From the NCBI GenBank assembly GCA_964247055.1, contig OZ176055.1, positions 8,742,001-8,806,000 on the forward strand: a stretch of DNA of 64,000 bases, written 5' to 3'. Both the position numbers and the translations under genes were made by a program. This DNA is from Paragordius varius (lineage: Eukaryota > Animalia > Nematomorpha). Below the pieces are notes generated by a model that saw only the letters and a program-made list of their open reading frames with translations, ran no database searches and had not been told where the DNA came from. Positions 28,978-40,886 of the stretch are shown piece by piece. The stretch's first letter is position 1. Each line of letters opens with the position of its first letter.

Positions 28978-31900
28978 TTAGTAATAAGTTTCTTGTTCGA
29001 CCCAACCATGAGGCCATTTTCTTATACAAGCTTTGCGTATTTCATCATACGCAAAAATGAATACTGAAAAGGGTAGGGGAGTTAACCACCATTTCCAACT
29101 AAATAATATCATGTAAATTAAACATCAGAAACGTAAAAACATATGCATTTAAAAGAATACCATAATATTTTTAAAACCTTAATATATTTCCCGTACAATT
29201 TATTTAATTACAATTGTAAAATGTATGATTAATTGTGTTACCAATATACCTTTTTATATTTCATACTTTGTAGTTAAAAACAATTAGTTACATCTAAAAA
29301 CAACATGTCCTGCAATCTTTTGAGAAAAATAGTTGTCTCTATATTTTTTTCCAAAAAAATGGTAAAAGTAATTTTATTATTTTTTCAAAACTTTAATGCA
29401 ATATAACCTGATTGGATAAAAACCAAAAGGAACAGATATTGGGGTATAAAACAAAATGCAAGCCAATCCAATTTGAAATAGGATTGAGGCATTTAATACC
29501 ATATTCCTAAAAATAATCATACATATAATGCCTCTGATGTTCAAAAAATGCACAGCTTATTATTTGAATTATCCAATCTTTATATCATTTAAGTCCCTTT
29601 TCTTTGCTTTAAAACTCAATAGAAAGATATAAGAAAATCCAATTTTACAATTCATATAATAATTTATTTTGGAAAACAATTATTAAGATATCAGTTGTTT
29701 AGTTGTTTTGAAGTTTGGCTTATTTTATTCACAACTATCAGTCGTATTTTGAAAAATGACCATATCTAAAAATTGCAAAAATGCATGATAATTAGCTGGA
29801 GCTAATTAATTTATCAGTGAAGTTTATTATAATTAAATAAAAAGGTTTATTTGAAAATTTTTATACCCTAATCCATGTTGAAATAGGGATTTACGTCGTG
29901 TTTTATGAACTAGGAGATTTGCCATTTGACAAACGACAATTGCAATGAAAAAAGCTGAATTGCTTTGACGTTCCAACATTTTTCGACCATTATAATCCTA
30001 CGCATAAATATAGAGATAAAAAATAGTGATTGAGGTAATTTAAAAGATTAATTTTTTGTAAATAACCTGCCCGAATCAATATTTCATATGTATTACATTA
30101 AATATTAAATTGGCACCCCAAAAATAATCTCAATATTGCCAAACTAAAATCATTGATTTTGCATATTTACAAAATTTTTACCCATTCCTGCCCATAGGAG
30201 TCTAATACGTCGGATGTTGCTTTGGCATCCCACAAACTTCGAATGAAAATAAGTCGGGACGGTAGAAAACCATTCAGAGCCATAACTATAAAATAGTTGA
30301 AAAACCCAGCGGCAGATTCAATTACCCCAAGTTGGGCATATGAAACACCCAATAATCTATTTGACAATTTCAAGATAATTAAATTTAAGCACAGTTCATT
30401 CAAAGTAAAAATTTACATACTTTGTTGTGACCAATTTATCCCCCTTATTCCTTGGTGGTTGATTCATAATGTCAGATTCGGCTTTTTCATATGCCAAAGA
30501 AATGGTGGGTGGCTATAAAACAATACGTTTTTATTTTTTATAAAATGGGAAAATCGCTTTGAAATAAGTAAAACTAATTTAATGAATGGTCAAAAAAAAT
30601 CAATTAAACGGAAAAAATATAAAAAAAAAGTTAAACATAATTGCTTAAATATTGTGTGTGAAAATATGCAATACATTTACTATGATTAAACCTAATCTTA
30701 AAATTGTTCATAAAAAAGGGATTATTAAACTCTGATTAAATTCTTATACCACATCGATCCCAAGATCAATGGTTAATATGAGAATGGTTGCCAGTGGCAA
30801 CGGGATATTAAAAACGACATAAATTAGGAATGGGGTTAATTCCGGAATGTTGTGGGTTATTGCATACCCAATCGCCTTTTTTAAATTATCGAATATCAGA
30901 CGACCTAAAAAGTGTAGATATCATAAATGTTTGCAGAAAAAAGTAAAATTAATTTGTTTTTCTAATTAGATATATCATATGCTATTTTTAATTAGGAATT
31001 TTATTAATTACATCAAACATAAATATTTTATTCGTGTTTATGATTTATATACGTATTTATATATATGGCAAGATTTTAAATCCTAGTGTTATAAATTCTG
31101 AAAATTATAAAACCTTCCTCGACCCCAGTAACGATAGATGCAAAGTTGTCATCCAATAAAATTATATTGGCTGCCTGTTTACTCACATCACTCCCCGTGA
31201 TCCCCATTGCAATTCCTATATATATATATATATATAGAATTCGATTTTGGAATTTAAAAATTAAAAAAAACGCAAAAAAAATTCGATTTTGAACAATGCT
31301 ATTGCATGAATCTACCAAAAAACTACTTAGAACATACTTTACAATAAAGGGACATTAATATTTAAACGATATTTTACTGATCGCTTAAATTATTATAAAG
31401 GCTTTCAATAAATCAATATTTCAAATAACGTGCCAGTTATCATATAACAGCCATATTATTTTAAGGGACAAATATTATAATATTAGATATAGTAATAAAA
31501 GTATGGATTATCCTAAATATCTGCTAGAATTTTTATATGTAACATTATTTCACAGTCAGTTATATTCTATCTTCCTCAAACCCCATTGAAAGACACAATA
31601 ATTGATCTTAATATAACATTCTTTCACAATCTCTAATAACAGTAATCCGCTCAATTTAAAATTTGATTTTATTTCCAAGAATTTGCCAAAATCTCTCACT
31701 CAATACATTTACGGTCCAAAATTTATTGGTTTCATTAAAACTTTTTTCTTTATTTTGATAAAAAGTAAAGTTTACCGATGTCAGCTACTTTGAGGGCAGG
31801 GGCATCGTTAACCCCATCCCCGGTTACGCCTACGATAGCGCCCAGGCGTTGACAACCTTCGACTATGGCTAGCTTTTGTTTGGGGGAAATGCGGGCAAAA

Positions 31901-34900
31901 ACAATCTCACTGAATCGTTTTAACATGCAATCCACTTCGTTAGGTTTTAGCGCCTGTAATTCAGTTCCATGGACAACGAGCGCTTTTGGTTGGGGATAGA
32001 CCCATCGGCCTTCACCCTCAGTCAGGGTTGGGATAGCGGCTAAAGCACTCTTATAACTATTTATATTTTGTATGAAAATGTAATTTTGAATGTGAGTTTA
32101 TGTGACAGATTGGAAGAAATATGGAATAAAGATTGATGAAATGTAATGAAAATTAAAGGTATGATTATAAAACCTTTCCTCGGTAATATTAAAGGTGATA
32201 AGTATGTTTTTTGTTACGTCCAAAATACAAAACCCGTTTTTTGTCTCTACATTAGGTTCTACTAATTTTTCTGAGAAAAATATGGGTCTTATTCCAAAGA
32301 TTATTTTACCAAAAAATGGTTCCAGCACTATTGTGTTTTTTTTCGAGAATGGTTTCAAAACCGTTAAAAATTGATTTCAAAGAAAAAATATAAGTTCCGG
32401 TTTCATAAAAACGGTTAAAAAGAAAAAAAATGGTTCAACGATTCTATAAAAAGGGTTTCGGCACCAACTTTAAATTTCAAAACTATGTGATAGTGATGGA
32501 TAATATTTAGGAACAAACCTTTGTGAAAACGTATTTTTTGACTCAAAAATTCCTTCCAGAATTGTATTTTCGCTCTTAATGATTCCAACATTTTTTGCTA
32601 TTGATTTTGCTGTTAAGGGGTGATCTCCGGTAACCATAATTATCTGTGTTTAAGATTGTATATACTCAAAATTTGGAAAATTTTAACAAAAACAACAAAT
32701 TTTGGTATAAACAATAGTTATTTTGTCAAATATCAATCCATTAATAATCATATCCAATTTTAGTTAGACCATAATATAATTTTCTAAAACTAAATATCAA
32801 ATTGACAAAGGTTATAATTAAAAATTTTGAATAATTATACATTTTTTCACAAAATATCTCCTATAATATCCAATTTTTGCACCGAATTTGATTGAAAAGA
32901 GAAAAACTTGACATGTCCAAAAAACAATAAAGGCATTGAATCAATAGGCATATATATACCTTAATACCAGCATGTCGACATTTTACTACGGCTTCCTTTA
33001 CTCCGACCCTGGGTGGATCAATCAAGGAAATAAGTCCGACAAATGTGAAATGATGATTTTCCCGTTTACCAAAGGAATCAATATCAAATTGTATCATGGT
33101 ACAAGATGTATCAGTGTATGGGTATTGTTCAACCGAACTTTCTAGTTCACAAAACCCTAAAACTCTCTCCCCGGCATCACCGAGCATTTGATAGGCCGCG
33201 TTAAAAGCATCCGTAAAATCCTGATCAATCGCCTTTTTCACGCTTTGGTTTGGATCAGTCGGGTCAGTCGTCAAATAATAATCACACATTGCTAAAACTT
33301 TTTCAGGGGCCCCCTTGAGAACCATGATGAATTTGTTGGGATCATCGTTTGATAAACGGTTGATTGATAACTGAAGTGAATGGGATTATGGTTGTTATAT
33401 ATGAAAATATTTCACATTCTTAACTTCTAACCGCTTATTGTTTGTCAAAAATAAAATTTTGTTATAGAACCGATACGATACCCCATTATACAAATGTTTA
33501 AACTGGCAATACAAACGAGTCTCATTCAAACAAAACTCAGTAATATATTTATAAAAAGTAGCTCTCAATAGAGTTTAATCCGGATAAAACTAAAAAATTA
33601 ATCGTGCATATATATAAATACATGAAATTTATCGGTTGAGTTGAATGGAATTTCCGCCAACATGGGTGAACTTTGACGAAAAGCTTCAACATTGCCCATC
33701 ACATGTTCCATGCATTTAAGGATGGCAACTTCAGAAGCATCTCCAATACATTCTTTTTCTTGAAGCGTTAACGTTTCATTTTTGGGTGTGGCTGAGAATA
33801 TGGCATGATTACAGAGGGCCGCTATGCGAGACAAGGAAGTCCACACTGGGCCAGTGAGTTTGATTTCTATATGAGCGAAAAAATAAATTTATATGTTTGT
33901 ATGCCATCTATGTTTGATACTTTTTTGTAAAACTATTAATTATTATTGATTGTGTAGTCTAATATTTTATATTATGATGAAAAAATACATCATGGGAAGT
34001 TAAGTTAGATTTTATTATATATGCATCATTTACTTGGAATTTTAATTAAACAATTCAATGTATTCTTGAATTTAATATATTCCAGAGTTATTATATGTTT
34101 GTATGCTAACTATGCAAAAATGGTTTCGCTACTTTTTTGTAAAACTATTGATTATTGATTGTGTAGTCTAATATTAATATTGAGAATTAAAATAAATACA
34201 TGAAAAGTTAAGTGTTTAAATAATAGTTTTATCATATATACCATTTGAATTGGAATTTTAATTAAACATATCAATATACCCTTATATTTATAATATTCCA
34301 GGGTTATTATATGTTTGTATGTGCTATCTATGCAAAAATGGTTTTGCTACTTTTTTTGTAAAACTATTAATTATTGATTGTGTAGTCTAATATGAAAATA
34401 AATACATCATGGAAAGTTAAGTTAGATTTTATCATATATAGCATTTACTTGGAATTTTAATTAAACATTTCAATATAACCTTTTAAAATATTCCAGGGTT
34501 ATTATATGTTTGTATGCTATCTATGCAAAAATGGTTTTGCTACTTTTTTTGTACAACTGTTAATATTGATTGTGTAGTCTAATAGTTATATTCAGGAATA
34601 TCAAAATAAATACATCATGGGAAGTTAAGTGTTTAAATAATAGTTTTATCATATATAACATTTGAATTGGAATTTTAATTAAACATTTCAATATACCCTT
34701 GAATTTATAATATTCCAGGGTTATTATATGTATGTATGCTATCTATGCAAAAATAGTTTTGCTACTTTTTTGTAAAACTATTAATTATTATTGATTGTGT
34801 AGTCTAATAGTTATATTCGATCATAAAAATAAATACATCAGGAAGTTAAGTTAAATTTTATCCTCAATACCATTTACTTGGAATTTTAATTAAACATTTC

Positions 34901-37900
34901 CATATACCCTTGAATTTAAAATATTCCAGGGTTACAAAATTATGCGTAAGTTGAAGTTTTAAGGGTCAATTTGGAAAATTTAAGGGTGAATTTAAAATGT
35001 TCAAAGGTAGATATGAAGTGTTCAAACGTAAATTTGAATTGTAGAATGGTATATGGTGAGCGACGTGTTACATTTTAAATATTAGTAAATGCTATTCTAT
35101 TTTTTCTTCGAGGTGTTTAAAACAAATAATAAAGTTGATGACTAATGAATTATGAGCCTACACAAAAACGGCTTATCAAAAATAGACACATTTAACAGTA
35201 AAAATTTGTTTTATTAAAAATTTTAAGGCTCAAATTAGTTAATATAACTCTATATTGTTTTTTTTAAAAAAAACTTATTTAAGCTCAATAAATATACCGT
35301 TTTTTGGTTGCAAATACGAAAATTCATGGCATTGCATTTCAAACCATATGTGGGAAACTGTCATTCTATTTTGGGTCAGGGTACCCGTTTTGTCCGTACA
35401 AATGGTTGAGGTTGAGCCCAACGTTTCGACAGATTCCAAATTTTTAACTAAACAATTCTTAGCCGCCATTTTTTGGGCAGTTAGCGACAGGCATACCTAT
35501 TGGGAGTTTGTAAAAATTATATTATTGCAAAAATGATAATAGGAGATTAAAATTTGCTCGATATAATATTATTTTAATTAATTAAGCGTAAAACTGTGGT
35601 GCTTAAACCCGTAAATCGCGATTCAAAACTTTTGAGATTGAAACCGTAAATAATTAATTTATATACACATTTCGCCATAAAATTCTTTTCTGGCCTTTTA
35701 AGGGATAATAAATGGAGTAAAAATTAAAATTATTAAGATAAAACGTAAAAACTTAGCCATAAAATATATAATAATAGAATCTGACAACAATTTATATTTT
35801 TATGTATTATTTTGCAACGCAACAGTAGTTTATGCCAAAAATAATCAAGAGTGAAAAAATATGTCTCAAAAAATATTTGTCGTTTAGTTTTATGTTTTTC
35901 ACTTAAAAAAAACTAAAGTACCGTGATAGTTGGAAGGAGGCCTTCAGGCACGTTAGCTACTATAATACCAATACAAAATATTAGTGCATTCAACCACGTG
36001 TAATGTATTACGATCGAGATTACGAAAAATAAGATGCCAAAACATATAGCAATCGCCGCAATAATTATGACAAATCTATGCAATTCCCTATGAATGGGTG
36101 TTTCTGTACTCTGAGTCCCTGAGGTAAGATGGGCTATTTGGCCCATATAAGTCGCATTTCCAGTGGTTAGGACTAAACCTTTTCCAGAACCTAAAAATTA
36201 TTTATAAATTTTTGAACTTTTATTTTTAAGAGCAAAAAAATGAAAGGGAAATAAGAAAATATTTTGTAAAATGGTTGGTTAGATATATATTGAAAATTTT
36301 TATTTACAAAAAATTTGTTTCACGTATTTTTTTACATTTTAAGATAAATACGGAATATAACGAAATTTTTATCTGTAACATCAACACTTTGATCGCGTTA
36401 AGATTTGACTCATTTATATATTACTAAATTAATAATATACTATTCCGATTTAACAACTGTTATATTAAAGGAGGAATTCATAAAGTGCTAAAATGGTATA
36501 GAAAAAATAAATTTATGCAATTAAAAATTAGCTAAAAACCTTTAACAGCAAAGGTTGTAAAGAAAGCCAAATTCCTTGCTTCCAGTGGATTTATGCAATT
36601 CGATTCTACTGATCTGGGTTGCGGTTCGGCTTCCCCAGTAAAACTTGAATTATCAACCTAAATTGAAATACACACGAAATCATTTTCAAAATCAATTTGT
36701 TACAACAATAAGAGTAAATGCAATAACGCTATCTATCTATATATAATTATACTTATATTATAACAGTTTTAAGTGCTTTAATAATGTATGACTATGTTAT
36801 CATCATTAATACATTTATTTGTGAATAATACAATGTTTTAAAGGTTAGAAATTGTCAAAATCGATACCGGTTCTTGGAGTTTAAAGCGGTTTCTAACTAA
36901 GTTCGTTCTTTCTAATATTAATTTATAAATGCTATTTTGTCTAAGAGAAATCTTTTAGGATATAAACTTTCATCCAACTTTTTGTATTTATATGATTCGG
37001 AGATACCAAACTTAGGACAAATTATTTATGAAGTTAGGAGCATCAAACTTAAAAATATTTTAAAAATCAAAATCTACGTGGCTCGTTTAGGTTGACATCT
37101 GTGCAAATCTGCGAAGTAGCCTGCTTAATTGTATTATTAACCATTTTTAATATACAATTAGGGTCGCGATAGTCATTGAGACTATAATTTGATGCCAAAT
37201 TATATCATTTACAATTCAAAACCCTTAAGCAATTCAAATTCACCTTCAAATAAATTATTTTGAAGATAAAAAAAGCTATATTTTTTTAAAAAAAATTTTG
37301 CTTTAAATTAAACTAATACTGAAAATATAAAAACTAAGCCACAAAGATATATTTTATATTAATAGTGAGTTATATTATTCGAATATATTTTTAGGGTTGA
37401 ATTGTTCAAGGATGAATTTTGAAAGTGAATTTGAATTGTTAAAGGGTGAATTTGAACTGTAAATGGTATAATATGGCTTATGTAATGTGTTCAAAAGTAT
37501 AAATGAAAAATTCGTTAGCCCCTGTATATTTTTGAAATATGTAACCCGTTGTTTGAAAAATTCTTATTTTTTTACCTTTAATCCGTTTGATCGGATTATT
37601 CTCAAATCTGCCGGGATTTGATCACCACCCCTAATTTCAACAATGTCTCCAGGCACCAGATTTGCCGACTTAATTTCCATTTTTCGTCCATTTCGAAAGA
37701 CCACGGCTCGCTAGATAACATATAGATAACCCCAATAACTTATGACAAAATATGAATGTATTAAACTTGCAATTATTACATAATTTTTTTATTTTAACAA
37801 GAAATTGTGGTTTTTTTCGAGCAAATTAAATTAAAATATGAGAAAACATATGTATTGTATACCGATGGTATCATTTTTTGAAAAGATTCCATAATTTTTT

Positions 37901-40054
37901 CACTTTTTGCTGTTTGCCAATAAGCAAAAGAACCATTTAACACCACCACTGAAATCAAGACTATTCCCAAGTAAAGCTATTAAACATATAAATCAATATA
38001 ACAAATTTTGCTGGATACATATTATTTCCAATATATGTGTTTTAACAGTTTTAATTTTAATCAATTACACTTTTAAAGGATGTTTACCAATTTTAAACTA
38101 TATATGATATGGAATGTTATAGCAGATTTTTGCATCGTAATATAAAAGAATTATGGTAATTATTCATTAAAACAATATTATGGTAATTATTCATTAAAAC
38201 AATAATAATCCATTTGCTTTGGATCTATCGTTAAACCAGTGTAAAAGCTGTATGGTGTATTTTTATAAAATATCCAGATTATTACACTTTTAAAACAAAC
38301 AGTTTAGTTTGATATTAAAAGGTTTTTTAAAAAACTCTATCTCATCAAAAATACAGTACAAACGAAAATATACGGACAAAACGTAAAAATACAAAAAACA
38401 AATATTTTTTTCAAAAGACAACCATATTTTTAAAACCTTAATTTTTACTAAATAGAATATTTGATTACGATCGTAAACCACATAATGGATTGTGCTACCA
38501 ATATCCATCTTTATTTTATACTTTGTTGTTTAAAACAATGAGTTATATTTAATAAAAATTAGGATTTGGAAAAAATGTTCTTTAATTTTTACTGTTTGTC
38601 CGTATAATTTCAATTTTTATTTTATATATGTTGAAATTTGTGTAAAAATTAGTTTATTATATATTATTATATTTTAATTTTCATACAAATATTGTGATAT
38701 TTTACACATTAATAATCAATTAAATAAATCAAAATTAATTCTTATATTGTTACCGCGTTACTTTTAAAAATTTTTCTATAATCAGGGATTCGAACCGAAG
38801 CATATTTTATGGAACTGAAACCACAATCTTTTTTCCAAGACCGTTTAAGAAACAAAAATTTTAAATTTTGAAATAAGCTCCGCGGTTCTCTTTTTTTAAT
38901 TTATATCATTTTAAATTTAATTTAATTCTTTTGGTAAGGTTGATGTTTTTGCGGCTAATTATTTAATTTCTATCAAAAAATCGAAAAACTATGATTTTGG
39001 AAAAAATATCACTAAAATCCGAACCATTTAACCAAAAAAACGAGAATATATCCAAAAAGTATCCGGGTAATCCCTGTTACTAAATAATACTATAAATCCG
39101 AAACATATTTGAATATCTAACCTAAAACTTTTGTGCATCAACTTTCATTCATCAAACTTTTTTTTGAAAAAATGCCACAAAAAAATAACCAATTTGAATG
39201 GGAAAAAAAAGTTAAGAATGACAAATGCAACATATAAAATATATATTTAAAATAAATATTTAAAAATGGTTACATTATCTTTGGGGGCCGTGGATATGCT
39301 CGTTAAATCTACAATACCATAAGCAACGAAACACAGGATGGATCCTATGATTAGGAGGGAAGCAAATCCCGACACTTGGTGATGCAAAAATTTTATCCAT
39401 TCAGGTGTTTTAGGGGGCGGTTTTAACACATTGAGTCCGTGATCTGATAACCGTGATTCGGCTTCTTCAACAGTTAAACCCTAAAATTATTTTTGAAATT
39501 AGAAGATAGATAAATAAATTGTAATTTAAAATTTACAGTAGGAAGGAAAAAAATGAAATTATACAGACGATAATAAACGTAAACACATAAATAAAATATT
39601 TATTTATATTTTTTTAAAAAAAGGGTTTTTGAACCTTGATTATTTCAGTAGGAAGGAAAAAAATGAAATTAAACAGACTAATATACGTTTTCCAAAAACT
39701 GCTGTACTTTTTTAAAAAAACTTGATTAATTAACTATAACTCATTTCATAGTGTTTTAGGTTGCATAATATGGAATGTAAATGTAAATTTATAACACATC
39801 ACTCAATTATGTATATCACAATTCTAATGATAAATGATTTATTTATAGAGAGTAAAAAATCACGGTTAAAAGGTATGCTTGTGTTTGGGAAAAAAATATT
39901 TCGTTATTTTTTTACATTTTGTCTGCACAATTTCAATTTTTACTATGTGTCGCCCAATCGTAAATACTAAAAGACAAATTTTTTCATTGGACTGATTTAC
40001 TCTTTTATAGATATATGAAATCGTTTTAAGTAGATATAGAGATGTACCACACTC

Positions 40055-40085
<31 letters not shown>

Positions 40086-40886
40086 CCATTTACAGTTCAA
40101 ATTAACCCTTTAACAATTCAAATTCACCCTGAAAATAAATTATGTTTTTGGGCTAATTTAACTCATCATTATAATGAAATATATCTTTATGGCATAGTTT
40201 ATTATTTTTTCAGTATTAAATTAATTTTAGACAAAATTAAAAAATATAAGTAATTTTTAATCTTAAAAAATAAATTATTTTAGGGTGAAATTGAATCATA
40301 AATGGTACATTAAAATTGTAATATGTGATTATGTAGAAAAAATCAAAATTGAAAAAAGTATGGCGGTTTTTATAGAAAAAAATAATCTTTAATATTCATA
40401 ATTTTATTTTTCATTGTAATAGTTATTTGAAAAAAAAGTAATTTAGGTTATTTATGTATAAATATTATAAAAACTTGTTCAGGGTCTGTTTGAAACCGTT
40501 CATACAAGGCATACAAAGGTTCGGTATGGAAGTTCTAGAAAAAAATTAAACTAAAAGTAGAAATTGAGAATTTTGGAGGGCGGACAAGTATAAAAGTATA
40601 TAAAAATTCTTAGGATTTTAATTAGACTGAAAAAAAAATAGTTTACATATTCCTCATTAGATAATGAGATTGATGGAGCCCGGGATTTAGTAAGTTTGTG
40701 GGAGAAAAGACTTAATATTTTATCCTTGATTTTTTCGCCCGTCTTGACATTCTGTTTGATCTTTTTGATAGAAGCCCTTTTCAATTCCTGCGTACGAATA
40801 GATATAGGCGAAGCGGCGCGTTCAATTAAGGAATTATTCCTGAGGGATTTCTTAACTTCCTCAGAATCTAAGTTAATTTGTGGCAT
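28978..40886 (-). CDS. Divergent P2C-type (Na,K/H,K family) ATPase alpha subunit, 19 exons, ~1092 aa
   Basis: Exons: 40886-40647, 40534-40475, 39480-39274, 37976-37863, 37710-37576, 36657-36540, 36190-35922, 35496-35298, 33866-33622, 33370-32960, 32643-32519, 32056-31776, 31215-31114, 30904-30750, 30512-30421, 30356-30182, 29997-29867, 29506-29408, 29098-28978. All GT-AG and phase-consistent. Motifs [43 protein letters not shown] and C-terminal ETYY. Confidence 0.94.
31217..31236. repeat. (TA)10 microsatellite abutting a splice acceptor
   Basis: On the minus strand it reads TATATATATATATATATATAG|GAATTGCAATG (exon 13 of the ATPase). Confidence 0.9.
33890..34933. repeat. Intronic tandem array of five ~195-222-bp units
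   Basis: TTATATG(T)TTGTATGC recurs at ~33890, 34091, 34307, 34502 and 34724. ATTGATTGTGTAGTCTAAT and TTGGAATTTTAATTAAAC occur in every unit. Confidence 0.92.
37201..37470. mobile_element. Foldback-like MITE family B (arms of ~20-bp AACAATTCAAATTCACCCT units), copy in ATPase intron
   Basis: Left arm CATTTACAATTC...AATTCAAATTCACC, right arm GGGTGAATTTGAACTGTAAATGGTATA. The core is the reverse complement of the core in the 40.1-kb copy. Confidence 0.75.
38151..38204. repeat. Perfect 27-bp tandem duplication
   Basis: TTATGGTAATTATTCATTAAAACAATA x2. Confidence 0.9.
40058..40085. repeat. (TA)14 microsatellite at the left end of a family B MITE
   Basis: Direct reading. Confidence 0.9.
40082..40310. 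mobile_element. Foldback-like MITE family B copy
   Basis: ATACCATTTACAGTTC...AACAATTCAAATTCACCCTG at the left; TAGGGTGAAATTGAATCATAAATGGTAC at the right. Confidence 0.75.

What the first reader, a model, noticed from the sequence alone, without database searches (positions are those of the whole stretch)
30750..30904. P2C ATPase with histidine at the key M5 selectivity position (YAITHNIPE)
Seen: M5 reads YAITHNIPE (His codon CAC at 30852-30854) and M6 reads TIDLGIDV. Known: Na,K-ATPase has YTLTSNIPE (Ser775) and CIDLGTDM, while vertebrate H,K-ATPases have Lys at this position, acting as a built-in cation that makes the pump electroneutral. The residues equivalent to E327, E779, D804 and D808 are retained, and T807 is Ile. 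Inference: a titratable His could give a pH-dependent or independently evolved H,K-like pump, or a new stoichiometry.
Basis: partly seen in the sequence, partly recalled or inferred. Interest (0 to 1): 0.75.

Follow-up and report, generated by a model that had tools for sequence, protein, structure and literature searches.

The report
Sodium-pump paralogue with rebuilt ion sites
An intact, selectively maintained relative of the animal sodium-potassium pump carries a histidine, found in none of about 270 relatives checked, at a key ion-binding position, and has changed seven more near-invariant residues around the sodium-only site, so it probably moves fewer or different ions than the normal pump; this is untested.

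Summary
Window 30750-30904 is exactly one exon (M5-M6) of a 19-exon P2C ATPase alpha gene (ATG 40886, stop 28978). It reads YAITHNIPE / TIDLGIDV. The His codon CAC (30852-30854) aligns without gaps to Ser775 of pig alpha1.

His was absent at this position in every relative examined:
- 150 cluster representatives
- 16 fragments
- 108 full-length P2C pumps (Ser, or Lys in H,K-ATPases)

The His is not isolated. Seven more positions that are 96-100% invariant in the 108 pumps are changed: T772A, T807I, Q854E, W924M, D926N, C930H and E954Q. All lie at or around Na+ site III and site I. The site-II and shared ligands are kept (N324, E327, N776, E779, D804, D808). Three of the four positions that experimentally interconvert non-gastric H,K-ATPase and Na,K-ATPase (775, 924, 930) are altered, and two of them are His where H,K-ATPases carry Lys and Arg.

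The gene looks functional: catalytic motifs and splice sites are intact, and 9 of 10 exonic polymorphisms are synonymous.

Best reading: a site-III-less pump with reduced, probably electroneutral, stoichiometry that arose independently of vertebrate H,K-ATPases.

Still missing: expression evidence, an orthologue, and any transport data. A sister note on the same window (s1-373853) had flagged the M8/M9 changes.

The parts
28978..40886 (-). Whole gene: P2C (Na,K/H,K-type) ATPase alpha-subunit paralogue with 19 coding exons. Exon lengths sum to 3297 nt, i.e. 1098 codons plus stop.
   Evidence: Exon map comes from tblastn of full-length P2C proteins and reading of the splice sites. No other P2C gene is in the window.
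40647..40886 (-). Exon 1: start codon and a Lys/Ser-rich N-terminal tail (80 codons).
   Evidence: ATG at 40886-40884 and donor GT at 40646-40645.
40475..40534 (-). Exon 2: [20 protein letters not shown].
   Evidence: tblastn matches the N-terminal DxHKxxxxELxxR segment of arthropod pumps. Splice sites read.
39274..39480 (-). Exon 3: M1 and the start of the M1-M2 loop. Position 111 of the ouabain site reads Val (read by eye).
36540..36657 (-). Exon 6: A-domain dephosphorylation motif, here TGEA instead of TGES.
35922..36190 (-). Exon 7: M3-M4, with [11 protein letters not shown]324 and E327 are kept; A331 is Pro.
   Evidence: PDB alignment E 7e-25; 3wgu_A offset 247-334.
35298..35496 (-). Exon 8: phosphorylation motif [12 protein letters not shown].
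31776..32039 (-). Exon 12: P-domain hinge [11 protein letters not shown].
30750..30904 (-). Exon 14 (the finding): M5-M6, YAITHNIPE and TIDLGIDV. Changes are T772A, S775H and T807I. Kept are Y771, T774, N776, P778, E779, D804 and D808.
30852..30854 (-). His775 codon CAC (GTG on the plus strand).
30182..30356 (-). Exon 16: M7, with Q854E ([10 protein letters not shown]), and the beta-subunit-binding SYGQ motif, which is kept.
   Evidence: Ungapped PDB alignment; 3wgu_A offset 842-899.
29867..29997 (-). Exon 17: M8, [17 protein letters not shown]923 is kept; the changes are W924M, D926N and C930H.
   Evidence: Ungapped PDB alignment; 3wgu_A offset 901-942.
29408..29506 (-). Exon 18: M9, [22 protein letters not shown], with E954Q.
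   Evidence: tblastn alignment to canonical NMVLNFALVFETCLAAILSYTP. This exon alone gives no PDB hit.
28978..29098 (-). Exon 19: M10 and the C-terminus, ending ...GWVEQETYY and a stop.

Best explanation
This is a functional, beta-subunit-dependent P2C cation pump. It is a long-branch paralogue of the Na,K-ATPase alpha subunit in which the Na+-exclusive site III has been dismantled and site I remodelled, while site II and the catalytic machinery are untouched.

Shown:
- The two site-III carboxylates are replaced by their amides (D926N, E954Q).
- The Trp that organises the site is Met (W924M).
- The Thr807 hydroxyl that hydrogen-bonds Gln923 is gone (T807I).
- Gln854 is Glu.
- His replaces Ser775, which lies between sites I and III and is a K+ site-I ligand.
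- His replaces Cys930, which is Arg in H,K-ATPases, where it neutralises Asp926.

Inferred: the pump cannot bind a third Na+. The His775 imidazole, probably protonated next to E779, D804 and D808, fills or perturbs site I. The pump would then exchange fewer charges per ATP than 3:2. The most likely outcome is electroneutral exchange of one or two cytoplasmic Na+ or H+ for the same number of K+, with ion choice or rate sensitive to pH. This would be an H,K-ATPase-like solution reached independently, with His where vertebrates use Lys and Arg.
For: Residue identities and numbering come from ungapped PDB alignments and tblastn.

In 108 full-length P2C pumps the eight changed positions are near-invariant:
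- 108/108: T772, T807, Q854
- 106/108: S775, W924, D926
- 105/108: E954
- 104/108: C930

His at 775 was found in 0 of 150 representatives, 0 of 16 fragments and 0 of 108 full-length pumps. Changes are enriched at ion-site landmarks: 7 of 17, against 28 of 259 other columns that are at least 97% conserved (Fisher p = 0.002).

Literature:
- Q923 and D926 ligate site III. W924 is Ile in both H,K-ATPases. The D945-R949 salt bridge neutralises the Asp. C930R makes the Na,K-ATPase electroneutral. D923N in human alpha3 (the pig D926 position) lowers Na+ affinity more than 100-fold without touching K+ affinity. K794S, A797P, I943W and R949C together turn non-gastric H,K-ATPase into a Na,K-ATPase (PMC9463140).
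- Ser-to-Lys at this position (Xenopus S784K) abolishes Rb+ uptake in Na,K-ATPase (PMC10756188).
- The T807 side chain hydrogen-bonds Q923, and S775 plus a water ligate K+ at site I (PMC9171065).

Evidence that the gene is functional:
- All splice sites are GT..AG and exon lengths sum to a multiple of 3.
- DKTGT, TGDGVND, MVTGDHP, PEGLL, SYGQ and ETYY are kept.
- 9 of 10 exonic differences in other runs are synonymous and the tenth is V to I; P about 1e-5 under neutrality.
Against: - No RNA run holds the gene, so expression is unproven.
- No orthologue was found, so conservation of the His over time is unknown.
- The full-length sample is biased toward canonical pumps. Nematode catp and insect JYalpha/CG3701-type paralogues could not be retrieved, so His may exist in an unsampled clade.
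- Q854E adds a carboxylate at site III, so the site could be rebuilt rather than lost.
- A neutral His could simply ligate K+.
- No structure of the whole protein could be modelled, because the joined model was left out.
- The polymorphism table was truncated by the tool.
Confidence: 0.5

Rival explanations
1. It is an essentially ordinary Na+/K+ pump. The His is a tolerated or fine-tuning substitution, for example lowering K+ affinity, and Q854E compensates for D926N and E954Q so that a third Na+ is still bound in a rebuilt site III.
For: All site-II and shared ligands are retained, as are Y771, T774, Q923, P778 and the C-terminal YY. Every exon scores higher against Na,K-ATPase than against H,K-ATPase structures. 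Q854E places a new acid at site III.
Against: Eight near-invariant ion-site residues are changed together. D-to-N at position 926 alone lowers Na+ affinity more than 100-fold, and loss of the Trp924/Glu954 network impairs site III (PMC9463140). Substitutions of Ser775 selectively disrupt high-affinity K+ activation, according to the title of Arguello and Lingrel 1995 as listed in the references of PMC10812997.
Confidence: 0.2
2. It is a strict H+/K+ exchanger, a true functional analogue of vertebrate H,K-ATPases. Protonated His775 acts as the tethered cation at site I, or as the carried proton itself, and His930 neutralises the site-III region.
For: His replaces exactly the two positions where H,K-ATPases carry Lys and Arg, and Trp924 is lost as in H,K-ATPases (PMC9463140). 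That paper predicts that strict H+ selectivity needs simultaneous destruction of site III and site I.
Against: The gastric-type E820 and Y340 equivalents are absent (D804 and N324 are kept). By sequence the gene is not related to the vertebrate H,K-ATPase clade (52% identity to ATP4A, 54-56% to canonical pumps).
Confidence: 0.2
3. It is a decaying or non-transporting copy: a pseudogene, a regulatory 'pseudo-pump', or an assembly artefact.
For: There is no RNA evidence. Other notes report eroded Na,K-ATPase paralogues elsewhere in this genome (s1-305296, s1-261320; unchecked). The protein differs at about 35 of 283 columns that are at least 97% conserved. TGES reads TGEA and CSDKTGT reads CTDKTGT.
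Against: The reading frame is open across 19 exons with all splice sites intact. The catalytic motifs are present. Exonic polymorphism is 9 synonymous to 1 conservative. A contig agrees exactly at the His codon, and Ser to His needs two base changes.
Confidence: 0.07

Closest known systems
Canonical Na,K-ATPase alpha subunits (e.g. pig alpha1, PDB 3WGU/3B8E; arthropod alpha)
   Same: Same architecture and catalytic motifs, the beta-binding SYGQ, the C-terminal ETYY, the site-II ligands and P778. These are the best PDB matches for every exon tested except M8 and M9: for M8, Na,K-ATPase alpha4 leads (33.0 bits) but non-gastric H,K-ATPase (32.8) scores above alpha1 (31.4), and M9 gives no PDB match.
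   Different: Only 54-56% identical, whereas canonical bilaterian pumps are 75-92% identical to each other. It carries S775H, T772A, T807I, Q854E, W924M, D926N, C930H and E954Q, an N-terminus about 50 aa longer, and a loop insertion of about 23 aa.
Vertebrate H,K-ATPases (ATP4A gastric, ATP12A non-gastric)
   Same: The same three switch positions are altered (775, 924, 930). A basic or titratable residue sits at 775 and 930, Trp924 is lost, and site III is functionally neutralised.
   Different: His is used instead of Lys791/794 and Arg949. Asp926 is mutated directly to Asn rather than salt-bridged. There is no E820 or Y340 (gastric) and no A797 (non-gastric). It is not in their clade (52% identity to ATP4A; lower per-exon scores except in M8, where non-gastric H,K-ATPase scores about as high as the Na,K-ATPases).
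Artemia franciscana alpha2KK (PDB 8K1L; PMC10756188)
   Same: A natural invertebrate P2C paralogue whose ion-site substitutions reduce stoichiometry. It is a precedent that such variants are adaptive.
   Different: alpha2KK changes N324 and N776 to Lys and keeps Ser775 and site III. Here both Asn are kept, and position 775 and site III are changed.
Engineered Na,K-ATPase mutants C930R, D926N/D923N, E954A and S775A/K
   Same: Each single change has a known effect (electroneutral 2:2 transport, loss of Na+ affinity at site III, loss of K+ affinity or of transport), and the natural protein combines equivalents of them.
   Different: In this protein the changes occur together, with His rather than Arg or Lys, plus Q854E. 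The combination has never been tested.

Membership tests
P2C ATPase alpha subunit (Na,K/H,K type) | Aspartyl-phosphate motif DKTGT | tested here: met
   [12 protein letters not shown] in exon 8.
P2C ATPase alpha subunit (Na,K/H,K type) | A-domain TGE(S) motif, the P-domain motifs MVTGDHP and TGDGVND, and M4 PEGLL | tested here: met
   TGEA (Ser to Ala), [18 protein letters not shown] and ANVPEGLL.
P2C ATPase alpha subunit (Na,K/H,K type) | Beta-subunit-binding SYGQ in the M7-M8 loop and a C-terminal ...TYY | tested here: met
   DSYGQEW; WVEQETYY followed by a stop.
P2C ATPase alpha subunit (Na,K/H,K type) | The best matches among solved structures are P2C chains, well ahead of SERCA | tested here: met
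   All top hits are Na,K- or H,K-ATPases. SERCA scores only E about 3e-3, against 7e-25 for the M3-M4 exon.
Canonical 3Na+:2K+ Na,K-ATPase | Site III ligands and support network: Q923, D926, W924, E954, T807 and Q854, with C/S (not a base) at 930 | tested here: not met
   Q923 is kept, but W924M, D926N, C930H, E954Q, T807I and Q854E are changed. These positions are 96-100% invariant in 108 pumps.
Canonical 3Na+:2K+ Na,K-ATPase | Ser775 as K+ site-I ligand | tested here: not met
   His; 0 His among about 274 relatives checked.
Canonical 3Na+:2K+ Na,K-ATPase | Electrogenic 3:2 transport | not testable with these tools
   Needs electrophysiology or flux assays.
Vertebrate H,K-ATPases (ATP4A/ATP12A) | Lys at the 775 position and Arg at the 930 position | tested here: not met
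   Both are His. H,K-ATPase fragments read YTLTKNIPE/YTLTKNIAE, and ATP4A reads QIADVLIRKTR.
Vertebrate H,K-ATPases (ATP4A/ATP12A) | Non-aromatic residue in place of Trp924 | tested here: met
   Met; H,K-ATPases have Ile (PMC9463140).
Vertebrate H,K-ATPases (ATP4A/ATP12A) | Closer in sequence to H,K-ATPases than to Na,K-ATPases | tested here: not met
   52% identity to ATP4A against 54-56% to canonical pumps. Per-exon bit scores are higher for Na,K-ATPase chains in the M5-M6, M7 and M3-M4 exons. In M8, non-gastric H,K-ATPase (32.8 bits) scores about as high as the Na,K-ATPases (alpha4 33.0, alpha1 31.4).
Artemia alpha2KK-type reduced-stoichiometry pump | Asn-to-Lys at positions 324 and 776 | tested here: not met
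   Both Asn are retained.

The most novel reading that the evidence does not exclude
An invertebrate lineage independently invented an electroneutral proton/potassium-type pump from the sodium-pump scaffold, using two histidines (775 and 930) plus a relocated glutamate (854) in place of the vertebrate Lys/Arg solution. The transported or gating proton would then sit on an imidazole in the former sites I and III. This would be a naturally pH-switchable P2C pump. It would also be a ready-made test of the published prediction that H+ selectivity requires destroying sites I and III together.
Probability: 0.2. Interest if true: 0.85.

Novelty: new variant of a known kind. Interest (0 to 1): 0.62.

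Why it matters
How P2C pumps choose Na+ or H+, and set 3:2, 2:2 or 1:1 stoichiometry, has so far been worked out from two natural solutions (vertebrate H,K-ATPases and Artemia alpha2KK) and from engineered mutants.

This gene would be a third natural solution. It touches the same switch positions (775, 924, 926/930, 954) with different chemistry: His, His, Asn, Gln, Met, plus a new Glu at 854. It keeps the rest of the machinery and is under purifying selection.

Expressing it would directly test the published prediction that destroying site III and occupying site I together give H+ selectivity. It would also show whether a titratable residue can replace the fixed Lys. For the animal, it could mean an unrecognised K+-uptake or acid-secreting pump.

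Tried and rejected
1. Word search with the 53-aa exon. It returned only 16 short fragments, mostly vertebrate H,K-ATPase exons, and none had His.

2. Word search with the 137-aa N-domain exon, to find orthologous fragments and then their contigs. It was blank, so the route to sister-species M5 exons failed.

3. Alignments of a long carrier protein with many window exons as separate rows (A1-A3). MAFFT aligned the fragments to each other and the alignments were unusable. Only a 5-row version (A4) was used, and its ranking was dominated by the carrier and by canonical pumps.

4. I first read M9 by eye as E953Q/E954I. The ungapped tblastn alignment shows E954Q, and position 953 is already Phe in canonical invertebrate pumps.

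5. I suspected kinship with a nematode catp-like model (P0001, GCA_900624965.1) from the shared LNAS.LF in M9. Canonical invertebrate pumps also have NMVLNFALVF, and P0001 is only 53% identical, so the idea was dropped.

6. Literature searches for His at this position, for insect JYalpha/CG3701 and nematode catp residues, and for the motif THNIPE gave nothing relevant.

7. The M9 exon alone has no PDB match.

Full report
**What is there**

The finding lies on the minus strand. The plus strand of 30750-30904 is full of stops. The minus strand reads [53 protein letters not shown]. The stated bounds are the true exon bounds: acceptor AG at 30906-30905 and donor GT at 30749-30748.

The window is AT-rich (about 27% G+C) and the gene is split by short introns. 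Using tblastn of full-length relatives against the window and reading every junction, I get 19 coding exons. They run from ATG 40886-40884 to TAA 28980-28978. Every intron is GT..AG, and exon lengths sum to 3297 nt (1098 codons plus stop). Only the donor of exon 11 (32484, GTTTTG type) is tentative. It is the only donor in the right phase, and three other introns of this gene use GTTTT donors.

There is no second P2C gene and no alternative M5-M6 exon in the window.

**Checking the observation**

phmmer against all PDB chains aligns the exon without gaps to Na,K-ATPase alpha1 (E 1.8e-18). With the 3wgu_A offset the residues are:

| Pig alpha1 position | Canonical | Window |
|---|---|---|
| 771 | Y | Y |
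| 772 | T | A |
| 774 | T | T |
| 775 | S | H |
| 776 | N | N |
| 778 | P | P |
| 779 | E | E |
| 804 | D | D |
| 807 | T | I |
| 808 | D | D |

N324 and E327 are kept in M4.

An assembly error is unlikely for three reasons:
- No Ser codon is one change away from CAC.
- A Logan contig of run X1 spans 30843-31148 with zero differences.
- A second, clearly diverged sample (X4, with introns mostly under 95% alike) has contigs running from 30744 to 30911 with no listed difference in the exon.

Two caveats apply. X1 may be the sample the window came from, and the tool showed only the best-supported differences.

**How unusual is His here**

- In the exhaustive HMMER scan of 1.84 billion cluster representatives with this exon, all 150 best hits carry Ser at the position. 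One of them has the neighbouring N776K. A His-bearing relative with about 60% identity or more to the exon would have ranked among them.
- The 16 fragments found by word search carry Ser or, in vertebrate H,K-ATPase exons, Lys.
- Among 108 full-length P2C pumps from arthropods, molluscs, choanoflagellates and protists, 106 have Ser and 2 have Lys.
- No paper in the library contains the motif.

There are limits. Representatives stand for 50%-identity clusters. The full-length sample is biased toward canonical pumps. Nematode catp and insect JYalpha/CG3701 paralogues could not be retrieved.

**The His is part of a concerted change**

Fixing pig numbering through ungapped PDB alignments for M7, M8 and M4, and by tblastn for M9, gives the following.

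Kept: N324, E327, Y771, T774, N776, P778, E779, D804, D808, Q923.

Changed: T772A, S775H, T807I, Q854E, W924M, D926N, C930H, E954Q.

In the 108 full-length pumps these eight positions are 96-100% invariant. Across 283 columns that are at least 97% conserved, the protein differs at about 35, mostly conservatively. The ion-site landmarks are hit 7 times in 17, against 28 in 259 elsewhere (Fisher p = 0.002). I chose the landmark list from the literature after seeing the sequence, so this figure is rough.

**What the literature says about these positions**

From PMC9463140:
- Q923 and D926 supply the side chains of the Na+-exclusive site III.
- W924, which is Ile in both H,K-ATPases, and E954 hold that site through a water network.
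- In H,K-ATPases the Asp is neutralised by a salt bridge to Arg949, the residue aligned with C930.
- C930R makes the Na,K-ATPase electroneutral.
- D923N in human alpha3 lowers Na+ affinity more than 100-fold without changing K+ affinity.
- Four changes (K794S, A797P, I943W, R949C) turn the non-gastric H,K-ATPase into a Na,K-ATPase.
- Gln873 (= Q854) is called another site-III-coordinating residue.
- The residue at 775 is described as lying between sites I and III.

From PMC9171065: the T807 side chain hydrogen-bonds Q923, and S775 with a water ligates K+ at site I.

From PMC10756188: the Lys of H,K-ATPases at this position blocks site I and is required for proton selectivity, and the Ser-to-Lys mutant of the Na,K-ATPase loses Rb+ uptake.

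This protein therefore alters three of the four experimentally defined switches (775, 924, 930; P778 is kept). It also neutralises both site-III carboxylates to their amides. It puts His at exactly the two positions where H,K-ATPases carry Lys and Arg.

**Is the gene alive**

All catalytic and structural hallmarks are present:
- CTDKTGT
- TGEA
- MVTGDHP
- [11 protein letters not shown]
- PEGLL
- SYGQ
- ETYY

In other sequencing runs of the same and a related label, 10 well-supported differences fall in the exons between 28981 and 33370. Nine are synonymous and one is V to I. With 77% of random changes being non-synonymous, that has P of about 1e-5. Meanwhile the introns differ by many substitutions and indels. 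This is good evidence for purifying selection.

No run on record as RNA holds the gene, so expression is not shown.

**Relationship**

| Comparison | Identity |
|---|---|
| Window gene vs canonical bilaterian Na,K-ATPases (about 950-1000 aligned residues) | 54-56% |
| Window gene vs ATP4A | 52% |
| Window gene vs a choanoflagellate pump | 50% |
| Canonical protostome pumps vs each other | 73-92% |
| ATP4A vs canonical protostome pumps | about 59% |

Three of the four exons that match PDB (M5-M6, M7, M3-M4) score higher against Na,K-ATPase than against H,K-ATPase chains. The M8 exon is a near tie, with non-gastric H,K-ATPase at 32.8 bits against 33.0 for alpha4 and 31.4 for alpha1. The M9 exon has no PDB match.

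It is therefore a long-branch paralogue and not a member of the vertebrate H,K-ATPase clade. Any H,K-like property is convergent. I could not tell whether it is an old paralogue or a fast-evolving recent duplicate. No orthologue was found, and the other Na,K-ATPase genes that earlier notes place in this genome lie outside the window.

**Mechanism, with shown and inferred parts kept apart**

Shown: the residue pattern, its rarity, the intact frame and the polymorphism pattern.

Inferred from published mutants: site III cannot bind Na+ as in canonical pumps, and site I is perturbed or occupied by the imidazole. The pump would then carry fewer charges per cycle than 3:2. The likely form is electroneutral exchange of Na+ or H+ for K+ through the intact site II, with possible pH dependence.

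Rivals:
- A near-normal pump in which Q854E rebuilds site III.
- A strict H+/K+ exchanger.
- A non-transporting or decaying copy, which the selection evidence makes unlikely.

The full-length search, fold and tree were therefore left out. Exons were searched one by one by reference, and identities were summed from tblastn pieces. The organism names of the runs were coded. Earlier notes call the genome horsehair-worm-like, which I did not test.

Noticed in passing
window 33913-34912 (intron between exons 8 and 9): A tandem array of about five copies of a unit about 212 nt long sits inside the intron (families D1-D6). It looks like a small satellite.
   Followed up: partly
window 29202-29248; also 37220-37470 and 40082-40240: The introns carry copies of a short MITE-like element (inverted pair I1, 55 nt, 93% complementary). 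A core of about 50 nt at 29202-29248 has word depth about 200 times that of its flanks in runs X1 and X4, with hundreds of contigs ending there. It is a very high-copy repeat of this genome.
   Followed up: partly
window 30911-31106 (intron between exons 13 and 14): In runs X1 and X4 some contigs join 30911 to 31082/31083/31106, skipping or replacing about 170-195 nt of the intron. This is haplotype-level indel polymorphism right beside the M5-M6 exon, while the exon itself shows no listed change.
   Followed up: no
window 39274-39480 (exon 3, M1-M2 loop): The first extracellular loop reads [21 protein letters not shown]. By eye, the ouabain-site Gln111 is Val, Asn122 is kept, and the loop is one residue longer. 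This may mean altered cardiotonic-steroid sensitivity.
   Followed up: no
window 32484-32643 and 31776-32039 (exons 11-12): The only in-phase donor extends exon 11. This gives an insertion of about 23 aa (…[34 protein letters not shown]…) in the loop after MVTGDHP…GII. It needs RNA evidence.
   Followed up: partly
window 36540-36657 and 35298-35496: Two hallmark motifs carry small deviations: TGES reads TGEA and CSDKTGT reads CTDKTGT. A331 in M4 is Pro (LLPTITV).
   Followed up: no
proteins P0202 and P0108 (relatives found): Two other natural P2C sequences read YTLTSKIPE, i.e. the N776K change known from Artemia alpha2KK. P0202 also lacks the canonical M9 Glu context.
   Followed up: no
protein P0188 (Darwinula stevensoni record): An ostracod P2C model reads QWANLIILKTR in M8 (D926N and C930L) while keeping E954. 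It is another natural site-III variant.
   Followed up: no
locus L001 (GCA_900624965.1, UYYB01120301.1), protein P0001: A nematode P2C gene model contains the second half of M5-M6 twice in a row (IMPFMSYVIVGIPLPLSLVAILMIDLGTDL twice). This is either a tandem or alternative exon pair read through by the annotator, or an annotation artefact. It has Ala at position 954 but keeps W924, D926 and S775.
   Followed up: no
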